Source: Mytilus trossulus (Eukaryota). Taken from it: a stretch of DNA of 64,000 bases. The notes under the pieces are model-generated. The model ran no database searches and had not been told where the DNA came from. It was given only the letters and a program-made list of their open reading frames with translations. Position numbers and translations under genes: made by a program. Of the stretch, positions 12,330 through 19,981 are shown piece by piece (within the stretch, counting starts at the first letter, position 1; every line of letters starts with the position of its first letter). Location of the stretch: positions 4,898,001 to 4,962,000 of the forward strand of contig NC_086380.1 in the NCBI RefSeq assembly GCF_036588685.1. The letters are read 5' to 3'.

Positions 12330-13665
12330 TCACTGTTCATTAATAAGATATGCGGAAAACATGCTATAGTGCCTTCCCAGCATTGTTTCTTCGGCGTTGT
12401 TGTCGTGTTTTATGTAGATTGTTTCCCCTTCCTCCAGAAGCATTACACTATGTAGTGTTCCCGGGGAATAATCATGTCCAAATAGTCCGAATATGACTTG
12501 ATTGTTCTTAATGAGATGACAGTGTAAATTCATTCCTGCAGCGGACATGAAAGTGCCTGATACGAAGTACAATCCGTTTCTTGGAACTGTAAATACGCCT
12601 GTAATCGAATTATATGTATTGCCCACATTTAGCCATACTTGGTCAAATATTATTGTTTCTCTTGGTTTGGGATAAATATCTGTCTTCAATGATGCTGTAA
12701 ATGCAGGTCTTTCGTGTATTTGTCCAGTTTCTATATAAAAATAAAGATTATATTCACAGAACAAATGGATAGTTCTCAAATGACATAAAAGTGGTACAAG
12801 TCGGCTTCTGACCGCACGAAAAGGAATTACTGATTCCAGAAAGTCGAACCTTACAATATTACTCGGATTAAAAATGTTTGGCTTTGAGCGTTCCTGATGA
12901 AGGTAAATCCAGAAAAGCGCGTCGCACGCATTAAATTATTAAACGTGTTGTTCTCAATTATTTTTTTTATTATCATTACATTACAAACTTTGTTTTATGA
13001 TTACACTAATTAAGGAGCATTCTAAAAACATGACGTGAATATTAAAAAAGCAGTGTGGAACAGTCCATACTTAAGTCAGGTGATGAATATTATAATTTTA
13101 CTAAAACTTTGTCCACCCTTTTTAACATTTAAAAAAAAAATTAAGATTCCAAACATATTTTACCAAGTATCAATCGATACAAAAAGGAAAATCTAACACT
13201 AGATTTTCAAGATGAAGCTACCAAAACATTAAGTGTTCTTACGTAAAATCGTAAAAATACTGAACGCAAAGGAAAATTCAAAACGAAAAATCCCAAATCA
13301 AATAGCAATATCAAAACTTCAACATTCAAAAACGAATGGACAAACCCAAGTTTAGCGTTGACAACATTGTTTTTTACTGATTATGTTTAAACATTTTACT
13401 TACCATATCCAATATCTTCGATGACTGCCGTTTTTATCATTGGAACTCTCTGGTCAGTAGCCTCCTTAACTGTCTTTATGATATAGTCCTTCAACACATG
13501 GTTTAGTTTAGAAGTGTCAAAAAGAGCTACCAAAGGCATCTGCTGATTGTCCAAAAGGGAAACCTCTACCGTAGAGTTTTTGTCGGGATCCTGTGATCCA
13601 TTCATTGATTGAACGTAACTAATTAGCATGATCATCAAGAATAGATATAGGATCGTTTGGTCCAT
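12330..13665 (-). CDS. Secreted C1q-domain-containing protein 2 (220 aa)
   Basis: Exon 1 13665-13404 (MDQTILYLFLMIMLISYVQS...), phase-1 intron, exon 2 12730-12330 with a complete gC1q domain. Closest paralogue of gene 1 (identical exon sizes, 262+401 nt). Confidence 0.93.
12888..12929 (+). ncRNA. Degenerate type I hammerhead ribozyme, family H2 (intronic, antisense to C1q gene 2)
   Basis: GCGTTC-CTGATGA(12894-12900)-AGGTAAATCCA-GAAA(12912-12915)-AGCGC-GTC-GCACGC, with mismatches in stems I and III. A 3' remnant of the same family (CTTCGGACGCA...) is at ~22695. Confidence 0.55.
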
Positions 13666-13785
13666 TTTGAATTTAAACCAATATGTACAATAGAAAACCC
13701 GCCTTGAACGTGTTCCTCTCGTCACTAACGTGTTTAAGGTTGTTGATATCGTGCCTATGAGTGGCCGTTCATGTCATTTGCGCGA

Positions 13786-14070
13786 TTATATACGCGTATA
13801 TAATTTTCAACGCGTATATATACGCGTATATTGTGGTTTTCAACGCGTATATTGTGGTTTTCAACGCGTATATTGTGGTTTTCAACGCGTATATTATCGT
13901 TTTATACGCGTATATTGTTAAAATAAACACGTTTATACTTTATTCCAATTTATTTATCATATACGCGTTAATATACGCGTTATTTGCATAAATATACGCG
14001 TTAATATACGCGTTAATATACGCGTTATTTGTGTTAATATACGCGTAAGAAATCATTATATACGCGTTAA
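13786..14070. repeat. CpG-rich minisatellite built on the palindromic core ACGCGT
   Basis: Repeated ACGCGTATATTGTGGTTTTCA units, then ATATACGCGTTA units. Confidence 0.85.
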
Positions 14071-14350
14071 TAAACATTCGTTTGTCTTATTGTTTTAACC
14101 AATGAAAGCTGCGTTCTTAAACTGGTTTGTATTTTAAAATCAATCGGGTCCAGGACCAATCCAGTATATCTTATCAAAATCCTTCGTTTTTAATTCAATT
14201 TTCTATGTGCATACAACTAGAATAATTAAAGATGATAAATATATATTTCCGATTATTTAATATATTTTTTCAGCATTTGTTTTCGTATTTTTCTAGATAT
14301 ACACAATTGCATGTTTGTAGTTTAATAATTATTGTGTCTGTATTGAAAAA

Positions 14351-14477
14351 AGGTGTTTCGGTTATGGTCATGTTGACCTAGGCTTATCCTCGTCAGGTAT
14401 CCCTAGCCTATTTGTTTCTTCCTTTGTAATATGTAGAATAGTTTAAATTTGATTTCTCTTATTGGGATACGACACCT
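14351..14477 (-). ncRNA. Type III hammerhead ribozyme
   Basis: Minus strand: AGGTGTC / GTATCCC / 60-nt loop / GGGATAC / CTGACGA / stem II / GAAACACCT. Stem I is 7 perfect bp, stem III is 6 perfect bp, and the core is intact. Predicted GUC cleavage between 14471 and 14470. Confidence 0.88.
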
Positions 14478-14603
14478 GTTATACGTTTTAGTTCGTTTCT
14501 TTCTTTTTTATGTTTCATCTGTTATTTTGTTATTTATTTCTCTTCTAATATTTTAGCAGTGTTAAAATTTAATATGTGTGATATTTTTATCTTTTATTTG
14601 ATT

Positions 14604-15339
14604 TTAAATTATCACACTATTTTCTATTTTAGAATTCGTTAAATATTCTTTTAGATTTCTATGTTTTTTGTACGCAATAATTGGTGGTTTTGGAAACATC
14701 GTTTTAGTATTCCTGTTTTGTTCGATTAGGTGCCAATGTTTCCTTAACGCTCTTCCGATTCCTTTAAATGCTGGGTTAAATCTAGTTGCAAAAACGAGTG
14801 GTGGAGCCGCTTTCTTATTTTTATAATTGTATTTCAAAGTTTGTTTCCTTTCTCGTTTTGTTGTATTAGTTATAATGTTGTCAATCTCATTTTCGTAATG
14901 TCCTCTTTTAAGAAGTTTAGACTTAAAAAACTGGACTTCTCTATTGAAGTCATTTATGTTATTGCAAGATCTTCTAAAACGAATAATTTCTGCAGTAATA
15001 AATTCTTTGAAATTATTCGTTTTAGAAGATCTTGCAATAACATAAATGACTTCAATAGAGAAGTCCAGTTTTTTAAGTCTAAACTTCTTAAAAGAGGACA
15101 TTACGAAAATGAGATTGACAACATTATAACTAATACAACAAAACGAGAAAGGAAACAAACTTTGAAATACAATTATAAAAATAAGAAAGCGGCTCCACCA
15201 CTCGTTTTTGCAACTAGATTTAACCCAGCATTTAAAGGAATCGGAAGAGCGTTAAGGAAACATTGGCACCTAATCGAACAAAACAGGAATACTAAAACGA
15301 TGTTTCCAAAACCACCAATTATTGCGTACAAAAAACATA
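14604..15339 (-). mobile_element. Penelope-like retroelement RT C-terminal fragment with fold-back inversion
   Basis: Translates FITAEIIRFRRSCNN...LLKRG...PLVFATRFNP...LRKHWHLIEQ...FPKPPIIAYKKHRNLKEYL, a PLE thumb/linker-type signature. Arms 14660-14990 and 15009-15339 are reverse complements, which is why the ORF track shows the same peptide on both strands. Confidence 0.8.
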
Positions 15340-18039: not shown

Positions 18040-19981
18040 TTAGCTTCCATCAATTTCATTTTCACTTATTAGATATGCAGAAAACATGCTCCAGTGATTT
18101 CCGTAAATTTGTTCACCGTCTTTATTGTCGTCATGTTTAGCATAAATTATGTCCCCTTTCTTCAAGGCCATTACAGTGTTTAGAGTTCCCGTAGAATAGT
18201 TAGTTCCAAACATTCCTACATCTGATTGGTTGTTCTTCCAGAGATGACAGTGTAAATGTATTCCTCCTGTGGCCATAACAGTACTTGAAACTAAGTACAG
18301 CCCGTTTCGTGGAACCATAAACACGCCTGTAGTAGGATTATACACATTGCCCATATTCAGCCATACCTTGTCAAATTTGAGTACTTCATTTGATTGGAGA
18401 GTTAAAGATGATGTCAGCGATGCTGTAAATGCAGGTCTTTCCTGGTTTCGTCCAGGTTCTTTGAAATAAATATTAAAAATTGTAAGAATAGTCTTGAATG
18501 AAATGTAAATTCAGTATATTTATGTCTTTATAACTGTTAATCAACAAATAAACACCTACAACAGTAACAACGTTGTCTCTCCATAAAACCATGTTAGTTA
18601 TATATATAAAGTGTTACGATACTGGATAGTTTTTAGATAGATTTATTCATTAATCATATAAATGAACTGGCACTTACATTGCAAATTTTGCTGAAACATT
18701 TATTCGTTTGTGCCTAAAAAACATTTTTCCAAGGTTTAAAACTAAGATTTTGGCTTTGACATGGACATCAACAGATGATAGTAAAATTCGACAAAAACAA
18801 ATACAAAAATGACTTCATTACAAAAAAAAATATACATTTATTCTGAGCCCTTATGCTTATCAAATACCTGTATCGTTTTTAAAATTTGATATGGTATGTC
18901 AAATGACAAACCCTAGGTACTGGCATCAGATTTAAAGCACTGACATATAGAGAATAATAGTGCATTGACTTGACATATCAACGATATAAGGATGAGGCTT
19001 AGAAACGGGGAAATACGAGGCTATGCCTAGCTATTTCCCCGTTTCGGGCCGAATCCTTATATCGTTGATATGTCAAGTCAATGCACTATTATTGTCTTTA
19101 TACTGCAATCTAAAAAAAATACATTAACAATTGTTGTTGAATGTGTTAATGTTTAATGTTGGTGAACTTCCCCCTTTTATAAAAAGGCCTCATATCATGC
19201 AGGCGGGGAAATATACAACACGGTGAAATCGACATTACCTGTTGAAATTCGCTATCGATGGTAACCGAATTGGTTTAAGAATGAACTGAAATATCAACAG
19301 TAAGCATAGAACATAATGATTTATATAGTTTGCAGACCAAAAATATAAACAAGTGAAATGTTTTTTTAATAAAATTTGCAAAAGAAATAAATTGAATAGG
19401 TCGTATGAATAATTAATTATAATTTCGAAAATTTCTATTTAAATATTCATGAGGAAAAGTGATATCATGTCAGTGACTGTATATGACATAAAAATATACG
19501 GTCAACACATTTTGACTGCTCAAATAGAACGAGTGCAGTATAAATTATAATATTACAACTTCCTAAACAACACTTATCTATAAGAGTATAGCTTAAATCC
19601 TTCGATTCAAACTTTAAGAAACTGTTTTAACAGGTGAATACAATGTTTGATTAGATTTTGTGGATAATGATTTGCATTAATATATCAAATTTCTACTGAT
19701 TATGTATCTTTTTTTTTCTTACCATATCCAATATCTTCGATGACAGCCGTTTTTATAACTGGAATTCTCTGGTCAGTAGCTGCCTCAACGGTCTTTATAA
19801 TATAGTCCTTCAGCACTTGGTTTAGTTTAGTAGTGTCAAAAAGAGCCACTAAAGGCATCTGCTGGTTGTCCAGAAGTGGTACCTCCACTGTGGAGTTTTG
19901 TGTAGTTCCCTGTGACGTCATTGACTGAACGCAACTCATTAGCATGAAGAAAAAAATGAGATGCAACTTTCGTTGTTCCAT
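18040..19981 (-). CDS. Secreted C1q-domain-containing protein 3 (225 aa)
   Basis: Exon 1 19981-19723, phase-1 intron, exon 2 18458-18040 (RPAFTAS...FDKVWLNMGNVYNPTTGVFMVPRNGLY...FSAYLI). Confidence 0.93.
18953..19544. mobile_element. Non-autonomous element: 140-bp hairpin plus IR-bounded segment (intron of C1q gene 3)
   Basis: Palindrome at 18953-19093, then TTTATACTGCA ... TGCAGTATAAA. Confidence 0.6.

What the first reader, a model, noticed from the sequence alone, without database searches (positions are those of the whole stretch)
14351..14477. Intact type III hammerhead ribozyme with a built-in pseudoknot in a Penelope-like element
Seen (minus strand): 5'-AGGTGTC|GTATCCC-(60 nt)-GGGATAC-CTGACGA-GGATA-AGCCTA-GGTCA ACA TGACC-A-TAACC-GAAACACCT. 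Stems I and III are perfect and the catalytic core is complete. The 6-nt bulge AGCCTA in stem II is exactly complementary to TAGGCT at the end of loop I, which predicts a loop I/stem II pseudoknot. Known: hammerheads in animal PLEs and retrozymes are mostly minimal type I motifs, and stem I-II tertiary contacts speed up cleavage. Inference: this is an unusual, probably monomer-active type III variant ~130 nt downstream of the PLE stop codon, on the same strand.
Basis: partly seen in the sequence, partly recalled or inferred. Interest (0 to 1): 0.9.

Follow-up and report, generated by a model that had tools for sequence, protein, structure and literature searches.

The report
Type III hammerhead ribozyme in mussel-like Penelope retroelement
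A complete self-cleaving hammerhead RNA motif of an unusual layout sits just after the reverse-transcriptase gene of a Penelope-like jumping gene. Many genomic copies of the element start exactly at its predicted cut site, so the ribozyme very probably cuts in the animal.

Summary
Minus strand 14477-14351 holds a complete type III hammerhead: helix III 6 bp, GUC|G cleavage after C14471, helix I 7 bp closed by a 60-nt loop, CUGACGA and GAAA cores, and an interrupted helix II. A loose descriptor finds only this site in the window and none in 60 random windows. No Rfam hammerhead model detects it.

It belongs to a repeat family with at least 133 matches in this 1.3-Gb, probably mytilid, genome. 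The upstream ORF is the C-terminus of a 657-661-aa Penelope-like RT. That RT is homologous end to end with RT+GIY-YIG proteins but stops before the endonuclease. The window copy is a dead, 5'-truncated insertion with the inverted arm typical of these elements.

- **Evidence of function:** 26 of 57 aligned copies lose similarity exactly at the cleavage site, with 17 different upstream flanks.
- **Evidence of selection:** a second young family (about 60% aa identity) shares non-coding similarity only in the two hammerhead halves and a 3' motif.
- **Pseudoknot:** the conserved 3' block begins exactly at AGGCU, the arm that pairs with the helix II bulge. This supports the pseudoknot but does not prove it.
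- **Non-autonomous relatives:** ORF-less 1.9-kb tandem arrays carry the same ribozyme.

Earlier first-reader notes of this scan describe other hammerhead/Penelope cases on other DNA of this genome. A word search found none on this type III family. Verdict: a new variant of a known kind.

The parts
14351..14477 (-). Complete type III hammerhead ribozyme. Helix III 14477-14472 / 14356-14351. Cleavage between C14471 and G14470. Helix I 14470-14464 / 14403-14397. Loop I 14463-14404. Core CUGACGA 14396-14390 and GAAA 14359-14356. Helix II 14389-14360.
   Evidence: Sequence read and coordinates. Only descriptor hit in the window against 0 in 60 random windows. Best-scoring class of covariance model R1 (175 bits). 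RNAalifold on 5 variants predicts helices III, I and the distal helix II hairpin.
14405..14410 (-). UAGGCU at the 3' end of loop I: the proposed 5' arm of the loop I / helix II pseudoknot.
   Evidence: Exact complement of 14379-14384, -7.1 kcal/mol. AGGCU is kept at the same place in the divergent L096 family although the rest of loop I is unrelated. The conserved block starts exactly here.
14379..14384 (-). AGCCUA bulge in the 5' strand of helix II: the proposed 3' arm of the pseudoknot.
   Evidence: In the L096 family it reads AGCCUU opposite GAGGCUU, giving up to 7 pairs and -8.0 kcal/mol.
14478..14603 (-). 126-nt A-rich spacer between the RT stop codon and the ribozyme.
   Evidence: It has no detectable similarity to the corresponding spacer of the L096 family.
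14604..14990 (-). 3' remnant of the Penelope-like RT ORF: the last 128 codons plus the stop. This is the post-RT domain that in endonuclease-bearing relatives precedes the GIY-YIG domain.
   Evidence: At least 150 genomic matches, with intact frames of 657-661 aa ending at this point. RVT_1 is found in the longer copies L006, L005 and L096. There are 1489 library homologues, including RT+GIY-YIG proteins.
15009..15339 (+). Inverted arm: a 5'-truncated copy of the same ORF segment in head-to-head orientation. It is 331 nt, 100% complementary to 14660-14990, with an 18-nt spacer.
   Evidence: The same architecture occurs in sister copies L002-L009. This matches the Penelope insertion structure described in PMC8557442.
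14132..14350 (-). 3' region after the ribozyme. It contains the conserved motif CTGGATTGGTCCTGGACCCG (14164-14145) and the family-wide 3' end ...GATTGATTTTAAAA (14145-14132).
   Evidence: Homology of most family members ends at 14131-14134. Tandem junctions read [..TTTTAACA][GTATCCCC..]. The 25-nt motif is shared with the L096 family.
13756..14131 (-). Extension specific to this subfamily. It holds 21-bp ACGCGTATAT-type repeats and ends in ...CGGCCACTCATA. It may be a co-mobilised flank or a subfamily tail.
   Evidence: Shared only with the closest copies L002, L003, L004, L008 and L009, in which it also forms the outer end of inverted copies. Its nature is not resolved.

Best explanation
**What it is.** The stretch is an intact copy of a type III hammerhead self-cleaving ribozyme. 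It belongs to the 3' untranslated region (pseudo-LTR region) of a family of Penelope-like retroelements (PLEs). Their roughly 660-aa ORF encodes the PLE reverse transcriptase without a GIY-YIG endonuclease.

**How it works.**
- In a transcript, helix III (6 bp) and helix I (7 bp) clamp the CUGAYGA/GAAA core, so one molecule can fold alone.
- The RNA cuts itself after C17 (window 14471). This leaves an upstream piece ending in ...AACAGGUGUC with a cyclic phosphate, and a downstream piece starting with 5'-OH GUAUCCC.
- Six nucleotides at the end of loop I probably pair with the bulge of helix II. This would tie helices I and II together as loop-loop contacts do in fast natural hammerheads. It would also keep the bulge GCC from mispairing with G10.1/G10.2.
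- The cut RNAs are used by the element's RT. The 3' product (about 340 nt, from the cut site to the 3' end) has been copied into DNA many times. RT that reaches the cut 5' end also jumps to the 3' end of another RNA. This gives head-to-tail junctions, chimeric SINE-like elements and tandem arrays.
- In arrays, every unit junction rebuilds a full ribozyme, so array transcripts can be cut to unit length.

**Shown here.** The motif, its family, the RT context, the copy boundaries at the cut site, and conservation restricted to the ribozyme halves.

**Inferred.** Catalysis itself, the pseudoknot, circular or rolling-circle intermediates, and which enzyme integrates an endonuclease-less element.

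**This copy.** The window copy sits in a dead, 5'-truncated insertion. It would act only if transcribed by read-through.
For: - **Motif.** It is complete and lies beyond chance.
- **Family size.** Model R1 finds 133 matches at E<=0.01 among the 150 candidates scored, about 48 of them at 146 bits or more. Thirteen distinct intact sequences occur in the loci held.
- **Cut-site boundaries.** 26 of 57 aligned copies keep GTATCCCC but lose all similarity immediately upstream. They fall into 17 different flank classes. About four are the element's own 3' end, two are a composite repeat and 11 are unrelated. Only a few copies are truncated elsewhere in the first 40 nt.
- **Footprint between families.** The young L096 family has at least 40 copies at 99-100% identity, and its RT C-terminus is about 60% identical. 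It shares with the window family, outside the ORF, only three pieces:
  - TA(A/C)CAGGTGTCGTATCCC;
  - a 60-nt block running from AGGCU to the end of helix III (82% identity);
  - a 25-nt 3' motif.
  
  The ORF-ribozyme spacer and loop I are unrelated.
- **Pseudoknot.** The arms are exact in the window and give up to 7 pairs in L096, with a U-A to G.U change on both sides.
- **RT context.**
- **Arrays.** Each unit of 1875-1976 nt carries one intact ribozyme, has no ORF above 137 aa and shows no RT similarity. Units are 86-99% identical between chromosomes.
- **Literature.** Loop I/loop II Watson-Crick pseudoknots are known in atypical animal type III hammerheads (PMC7936874). A role in cutting tandem PLE transcripts has been proposed before (PMC4209133, PMC8557442).
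Against: - No cleavage assay and no RNA data were possible.
- No Rfam hammerhead model scores the motif, even at E<=10.
- Helix II is weak: two G-C pairs, then an A.A mismatch. Nested folding prefers a local GG/CC hairpin to the proximal helix II.
- In the L096 family the minimum-free-energy fold replaces helix I with other pairings.
- Covariation within the family is weak and uninformative. The copies are mostly decaying pseudogene-like insertions, and the apparent double changes in helix III come from non-homologous flanks.
- The two families share ancestry, so conserved pseudoknot arms are not independent evidence.
- No relatives from other species could be obtained.
Confidence: 0.8

Rival explanations
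1. The motif is a fossil. It is a hammerhead-shaped sequence inherited by recent copies of a repeat, and it no longer (or never) cleaves in vivo. The copy boundaries at G1.1 would then arise from reverse-transcriptase stalling or template switching at a structured spot, not from RNA cleavage.
For: No activity data exist. Rfam models do not recognise it. Helix II is imperfect and alternative folds compete. Many copies are near-identical, so identity alone does not show selection.
Against: - The boundary falls on the exact phosphodiester predicted by hammerhead chemistry in 26 of 57 copies, with 17 flank classes.
- At that point an RT moving 3' to 5' has already copied both strands of helix I and the 3' strand of helix III, so no helix lies ahead to stall it.
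- Between two families whose spacer and loop I are unalignable, the conserved islands coincide with the two ribozyme halves.
Confidence: 0.12
2. The ribozyme is real, but the UAGGCU/AGCCUA complementarity is not a tertiary pseudoknot of the active fold. Either it forms an alternative, inactive hairpin that sequesters the 3' strand of helix I and the CUGAYGA box as a folding switch, or it is simply part of a conserved block with no pairing role.
For: In the L096 sequence the minimum-free-energy fold uses exactly this pairing as a nested hairpin while helix I is replaced. No compensatory double changes were seen among 57 copies; only one-sided changes, about half of them wobble. One otherwise intact copy (L019) has a G-to-A change in the loop arm.
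Against: - The arms lie 7 bp (helix I) and 5 bp (helix II) from the core. This is the range where natural hammerheads make loop-loop contacts.
- Comparable GCCR/YGGC pseudoknots exist in animal type III hammerheads (PMC7936874).
- Conservation of loop I begins exactly at the arm.
- The outer pair changes on both sides, U-A to G.U, in L096.
Confidence: 0.35
3. The hammerhead belongs primarily to a non-autonomous, retrozyme-like tandem repeat (the 1.9-kb ORF-less units) that parasitises PLEs. Its presence after the RT ORF would reflect chimeric capture rather than a function of the autonomous element.
For: ORF-less arrays of 1875-1976-nt units with one intact ribozyme each occur on at least two chromosomes. 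PMC8557442 raises the idea that hammerheads may simply parasitise PLEs. A 2026 preprint (10.64898/2026.07.22.740005) links animal retrozymes to PLE pseudo-LTRs.
Against: Two RT families only about 60% identical both carry the motif about 100-130 nt after their stop codon, with the same 3' motif. This indicates long co-inheritance with the coding element. The ORF-less units share only the last ~67 nt before the ribozyme and the 3' region with the PLE, as expected for derivatives.
Confidence: 0.15

Closest known systems
[quoted passage not shown]
   Same: A hammerhead core sits in the terminal non-coding repeat of a PLE. The elements are arranged in tandem or inverted, and the proposed role is processing of tandem transcripts.
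   Different: - The known motifs are type I, with helix III reduced to 0-2 bp. They lack loop-loop contacts, are thought to act as dimers, and have poor activity in vitro.
- This motif is type III, with a 6-bp helix III, a 60-80-nt loop I and a candidate Watson-Crick pseudoknot. It is therefore expected to act as a monomer.
Atypical type III hammerheads with loop 1/loop 2 pseudoknots in HDV-like circRNAs of a toad and a termite, and in Drosophila pseudoobscura and other dipteran genomes (PMC7936874, citing Perreault et al. 2011)
   Same: Animal type III topology, an enlarged helix I domain, and a short GC-rich Watson-Crick pairing (there GCCR with YGGC) between the helix I loop and helix II.
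   Different: - There the pairing joins the 5' side of an internal loop of helix I to the hairpin loop of helix II.
- Here it joins the 3' end of a large loop I to a bulge in the 5' strand of helix II, and GGC/GCC sit on the opposite partners.
- No sequence homology was tested.
- The hosts there are deltavirus-like agents or unannotated insect loci, not PLEs.
Non-LTR retrozymes of animals, including those of Mytilus galloprovincialis (PMC7229834; 10.64898/2026.07.22.740005)
   Same: Non-autonomous, AT-rich tandem repeats with one hammerhead per unit, related to PLE terminal regions.
   Different: Described retrozymes have type I hammerheads and units of about 150-450 nt. The arrays seen here have a type III hammerhead and units of about 1.9 kb. 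Circular RNA was not tested.
Plant LTR retrozymes and viroid-like RNAs with type III hammerheads (PMC4918200)
   Same: Type III topology and monomeric self-cleavage defining unit-length RNAs.
   Different: Those motifs have a 6-bp helix I with a 6-8-nt loop and non-Watson-Crick loop contacts. Their context is GC-rich LTRs with PBS/PPT sites and Gypsy-type mobilisation.
HDV-like ribozymes at the 5' ends of R2, RTE and L1Tc non-LTR retrotransposons (cited in PMC7936874, PMC7761336)
   Same: A self-cleaving RNA fixes the 5' end of a retroelement RNA, so genomic copies begin at the cut site.
   Different: They are a different ribozyme class. They lie at the 5' end of the unit, whereas this motif lies about 340 nt from the family 3' end.

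Membership tests
Hammerhead ribozyme | Conserved core C3 U4 G5 A6 N7 G8 A9 and G12 A13 A14 | tested here: met
   CUGACGA 14396-14390 and GAAA 14359-14356. Other intact copies read CUGAUGA.
Hammerhead ribozyme | Three helices around the core, with A15.1-U16.1, G10.1-C11.1 and a non-G nucleotide at the cleavage site 17 | tested here: met
   Helix III 6 bp including U16.1-A15.1. C17 at 14471. Helix I 7 bp. Helix II starts G-C, G-C.
Hammerhead ribozyme | Match to a curated Rfam hammerhead covariance model at its gathering score | tested here: not met
   No hammerhead family is reported at gathering score. None is reported at E<=10 on the local stretch or on four other family members. The 60-80-nt loop I and the interrupted helix II are the likely reasons; this is an inference.
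Hammerhead ribozyme | Site-specific self-cleavage giving a 5'-OH and a 2',3'-cyclic phosphate | not testable with these tools
   Indirect evidence only: 26 of 57 copies begin exactly at G1.1, with 17 different upstream flanks.
Type III topology | 5' and 3' ends lie in helix III; helices I and II are closed | tested here: met
   The order along the strand is: helix III 5' strand, cut site, helix I with its loop, CUGAYGA, helix II, GAAA, helix III 3' strand. In the 1.9-kb arrays the alternative closure of helix III would span about 1.75 kb.
Hammerheads with a helix I / helix II pseudoknot | Watson-Crick pairing between the two domains, supported by covariation or mutagenesis | tested here: inconclusive
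   Exact 6-bp complement. It is kept, with one double change, in the L096 family. There are no compensatory changes among 57 copies.
Penelope-like elements | PLE-type reverse transcriptase | tested here: met
   The window ORF remnant matches 657-661-aa genomic ORFs carrying RVT_1. The homologue P0004 aligns over aa 30-651 with RT+GIY-YIG proteins. The N-terminal LSKGLKF and ADKNS-type motifs in P0004 were recognised from memory of Arkhipova 2006 and were not tested.
Penelope-like elements | GIY-YIG endonuclease (C-terminal in canonical clades, N-terminal in Naiad/Chlamys) | tested here: not met
   No GIY-YIG was found in L006, L005 or L096 ORF pieces, nor in the ~650-aa homologues P0004, P0016, P0018 and P0056. 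All of these end right after the post-RT domain. Subclades without EN inside EN+ clades are reported in PMC8557442. About 1 kb upstream of the full-length ORF in the ~4.8-kb unit could not be read.
Penelope-like elements | Partial tandem (pseudo-LTR) and inverted 5'-truncated copy architecture | tested here: met
   A 331-nt perfect inverted arm. The same layout occurs in sister copies. Head-to-tail and head-to-head arrays are present.
Animal non-LTR retrozymes | Non-autonomous tandem repeats with a type I hammerhead in every unit, expressed as circular RNA | tested here: not met
   ORF-less tandem units with one ribozyme each exist. However, the ribozyme is type III, the units are about 1.9 kb, and circular RNA could not be tested.

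The most novel reading that the evidence does not exclude
This would be a previously undescribed lineage of monomer-active, pseudoknot-braced type III hammerheads that is native to endonuclease-less Penelope-like elements of a bivalve and to their 1.9-kb non-autonomous tandem derivatives. On this reading the genomic copy boundaries record in vivo cleavage, which would give the first direct handle on what hammerheads do for PLEs. They would define RNA ends that the RT then copies, and from which it jumps to build tandem arrays and chimeric SINE-like elements.
Probability: 0.45. Interest if true: 0.75.

Novelty: new variant of a known kind. Interest (0 to 1): 0.62.

Why it matters
Hammerheads are a hallmark of Penelope-like elements, but the known ones are minimal type I motifs with weak, dimer-dependent activity, and their role is still called unclear (PMC4209133, PMC8557442).

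This family offers three things:

- A canonical-strength, single-molecule ribozyme in the same genomic position.
- A genomic record of where the RNA was cut, in the form of copies, junctions and chimeras that start at G1.1.
- Autonomous and non-autonomous partners in one genome.

Together these make the question of what the ribozyme does for the retroelement directly testable.

It also shows that standard searches miss such motifs. Rfam models do not score it, and published screens rely on type I descriptors. Reports that some element clades lack hammerheads should therefore be read with care.

Tried and rejected
- **Rfam.** cmscan of the whole window at gathering score, of the local stretch at E<=10, and of four family loci at E<=10 gave no hammerhead hit.
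- **Covariation.** Pair counts on 57 aligned copies gave 85% of cells paired but no informative compensatory changes. The double changes counted in helix III come from non-homologous flanks of truncated copies.
- **Relatives in other species.**
  - Two metagenome pattern scans gave nothing related: first 0 hits, then 120 chance 17-mer hits. One of those loci scored 22 bits with R1, away from the pattern site.
  - Contigs labelled human-gut metagenome were left out of the model search.
- **More genome copies.** The weakest, most divergent R1 matches and the second RT family could therefore not be read.
- **Pfam on the 184-aa window ORF alone** gave nothing. That ORF is half artefact of the inverted repeat.
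- **Naiad-type PLE** (N-terminal endonuclease) was considered and rejected. The ~650-aa homologues start with a basic stretch and PLE N-terminal motifs and have no GIY-YIG.
- **Chance origin** of the motif was considered and rejected.

Full report
**1. The observation**

Read on the minus strand, 14477-14351 contains every element of a hammerhead ribozyme in type III order.

- Helix III: AGGUGU (14477-14472) pairs with ACACCU (14356-14351).
- Cleavage site: C17 at 14471, followed by G1.1 at 14470.
- Helix I: GUAUCCC (14470-14464) pairs with GGGAUAC (14403-14397) and is closed by a 60-nt loop.
- Core: CUGACGA (14396-14390) and GAAA (14359-14356).
- Helix II:
  - GGAUA/UAACC forms two G-C pairs, one A.A mismatch and two A-U pairs.
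  - It carries a six-nucleotide bulge, AGCCUA (14384-14379).
  - It also carries a five-base-pair hairpin, GGUCA-ACA-UGACC.
- Pseudoknot arm: UAGGCU (14410-14405), one nucleotide before the 3' strand of helix I, is the exact complement of the bulge.

A loose structural descriptor finds only this site in the window and nothing in 60 random windows of the same composition. The single-sequence fold is not unusually stable (z = -1.1), but it contains helices III, I and the distal hairpin. RNAalifold on five variants predicts the same three helices. No Rfam hammerhead model reports the motif or four relatives, even at E<=10.

**2. It is a repeat family**

The window is contig 8 of a 1.3-Gb assembly with 541 contigs. 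There are 14 chromosome-sized contigs, about 32% G+C, and C1q-domain genes next door. I infer a mytilid mussel, but this was not verified.

BLAST of the 171-nt stretch finds at least 41 places. A covariance model built from 17 copies (R1) finds 133 matches among the 150 candidates scored, about 48 of them at 146 bits or more. Thirteen distinct intact ribozyme sequences occur in the loci I could read.

**3. The host element**

The 184-aa ORF that ends 127 nt upstream is partly an artefact. Positions 14660-14990 and 15009-15339 form a perfect 331-nt inverted repeat. Only the last 128 codons (14990-14607) are genuine coding sequence.

- That segment matches at least 150 genomic places. Several have intact frames of 657-661 aa that end at the same point.
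- The longer copies carry RVT_1.
- In a library of 1.8 billion representatives there are 1489 homologues. Many are 643-672 aa long and end with this domain. More distant ones continue into a GIY-YIG domain.
- The 653-aa homologue P0004 aligns over residues 30-651 with a 906-aa RT+GIY-YIG protein (31% identity, E 1e-84).

The element is therefore a Penelope-like retroelement of a lineage without a detectable endonuclease. PMC8557442 mentions such subclades inside endonuclease-bearing clades.

The window copy is a 5'-truncated insertion with an inverted 5'-truncated arm. This is the layout drawn for PLEs in that paper. Sister copies share it.

Array spacings of 4793 and 4971 nt suggest a full length near 5 kb. 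An additional open frame of at least 286 aa lies upstream of the RT ORF in one copy. I could not read that unit completely.

**4. Evidence that the ribozyme works in the animal**

*Copy boundaries.*

- Of 57 copies aligned to R1, 21 have the full motif.
- Another 26 keep GTATCCCC but lose all similarity immediately upstream, at the predicted scissile bond.
- Those 26 fall into 17 classes of upstream sequence:
  - about four are the element's own 3' end (...GATTGATTTTAACA directly joined to GTATCCCC);
  - two are a composite SINE-like repeat whose 3' module starts at G1.1;
  - eleven are unrelated single-copy flanks.
- Only a few copies are truncated elsewhere in the first 40 nt.
- An RT copying the RNA from its 3' end would already have passed both strands of helix I at this point. 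A structural stall is therefore an unlikely alternative.

*Conservation between families.*

- A second, very young family (L096 type) has at least 40 copies at 99-100% identity. Its RT C-terminus is about 60% identical.
- Its motif lies about 97 nt after its own stop codon.
- Outside the ORF the two families align only in three islands:
  - TA(A/C)CAGGTGTCGTATCCC, which is the helix III and helix I 5' strands;
  - a 60-nt block from AGGCU to the end of helix III (82% identity);
  - a 25-nt motif near the 3' end.
- The ORF-ribozyme spacer and the rest of loop I (60 against 80 nt) are unalignable.
- Selection has therefore kept exactly the ribozyme.

**5. The pseudoknot**

Points in favour:

- The pairing is exact in the window (-7.1 kcal/mol).
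- In the L096 family it reads GAGGCUU with AAGCCUU, up to 7 pairs (-8.0 kcal/mol). The outer U-A pair is replaced by G.U through changes on both sides.
- The conserved 3' block begins exactly at the loop arm.
- The arms lie 7 bp (helix I) and 5 bp (helix II) from the core. This is where natural hammerheads make their loop-loop contacts.
- Watson-Crick GCCR/YGGC pseudoknots are described for atypical animal type III hammerheads (PMC7936874).
- Nested folding pairs the bulge GCC with G10.1/G10.2. A pseudoknot would remove that competitor. This last point is my inference.

Points against or unresolved:

- Among 57 mostly decayed copies there are only one-sided changes, about half of them wobble.
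- One otherwise intact copy has a mismatch in the loop arm.
- The two families are related by descent.
- In L096 the minimum-free-energy fold uses this pairing as an ordinary hairpin while helix I is replaced. A switch-like alternative fold therefore cannot be excluded.

I put the pseudoknot at about 0.55-0.6.

**6. Non-autonomous relatives**

Tandem arrays lie on contigs 10 and 4, some of them head to head.

- Their units are 1882, 1875 and 1961-1976 nt long.
- Each unit has one intact ribozyme, no open frame above 137 aa and no RT similarity.
- Units are 86-99% identical between chromosomes.
- They share with the autonomous element only the ~67 nt before the ribozyme and the 3' region.

These arrays are retrozyme-like, but they carry a type III ribozyme and have far longer units than the 150-450-nt type I retrozymes described in animals, mussels included (PMC7229834).

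**7. Comparison with what is known, and novelty**

Hammerheads in PLE terminal repeats are well known, but they are described as minimal type I motifs that act as dimers (PMC4209133, PMC6155905, PMC7761336). A 2026 preprint still defines animal retrozymes and PLE motifs as type I (10.64898/2026.07.22.740005). Type III hammerheads with pseudoknots are known in animals only from HDV-like agents and some insect genomes (PMC7936874).

In the library searched I found no report of a type III hammerhead in a PLE or in a mollusc. One key paper (Lunse et al. 2017) was not held.

I therefore class this as a new variant of a known kind. It is interesting mainly because the copy boundaries give a readable record of cleavage.

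**8. Limits**

- There is no biochemical or RNA evidence.
- Metagenome scans gave nothing related.
- Earlier first-reader notes of this scan list other hammerhead/PLE cases on other pieces of this genome. One of them describes repeats that start at a hammerhead cut site. I did not test those notes, and a word search found none on this type III family.

Noticed in passing
G000 contig 10: 4877420-4900230; contig 4: 42123441-42145545 (loci L048-L056, L033-L036, L014-L017, L027-L030): Head-to-tail and head-to-head tandem arrays of ORF-less units of 1875-1976 nt. They are 28% G+C, each carries one intact type III hammerhead, and they are 86-99% identical between chromosomes. They look like retrozymes but have a type III ribozyme and unusually long units.
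   Followed up: partly
L078-L083, L088, L091 (contigs 8, 4, 10, 5, 7, 1, 14): A dispersed composite repeat. Its 5' module ends ...AGAAAAGGGGGGTCTAAATC.GCCTCTGGA and is fused exactly at G1.1 to the post-cleavage part of the element. Most members have a degraded CUGAUGA box. It looks like a SINE-like chimera born by template switching at the cut RNA end.
   Followed up: partly
G000 contig 8: 12976537-13003178; contig 13: 33905720-33912460; contig 12: 49648507-49668280; contig 14: 3513704-3520558 (L096 family): A very young sister family with at least 40 ribozyme regions at 99-100% identity. It forms arrays with spacings of 4971, about 2240 and 2204 nt, some head to head. It is probably still active.
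   Followed up: partly
G000 contig 12: 18454812-18465433; contig 27: 510-6003; contig 4: 94540503-94548093: A third RT family (659-aa frames, 34% identical in the C-terminal domain) lies in regular 2564-nt tandem arrays. Some of these are interleaved with L096-type ribozyme copies. Whether it has its own ribozyme could not be read.
   Followed up: no
L006:4-861 (-), i.e. contig 5 about 85376761-85377618: An open frame of at least 286 aa, with an RGG-rich end and no Pfam match, lies between a ribozyme-bearing 3' end and the full 661-aa RT ORF. It may be an ORF1 of the ~4.8-kb full-length unit.
   Followed up: partly
window 14145-14164 (-); L096 minus strand, twice: A 25-nt motif (ATATA..GGATTGGTYCTGGACYCG) close to the element's 3' end is the only non-ribozyme, non-coding island shared by the two RT families. 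It may be the RT recognition or priming site.
   Followed up: no
window 13801-14076: A block of 21-bp tandem repeats built on ACGCGTATAT, with internal inverted symmetry. It lies inside the 375-nt extension that only the closest sister copies share.
   Followed up: partly
window 12330-12779 (-) and 18040-18354 (-): Two C1q-domain open frames (Pfam E 3e-18 and 1e-10) flank the insertion. They are probably exons of host C1q-domain genes, as expanded in bivalves.
   Followed up: partly
RT ORFs of the family (P0004, P0016, P0018, P0056; L005, L006, L096): The RT lineage has no detectable GIY-YIG endonuclease, yet it is dispersed on many chromosomes and recently active. How it integrates is unexplained.
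   Followed up: partly
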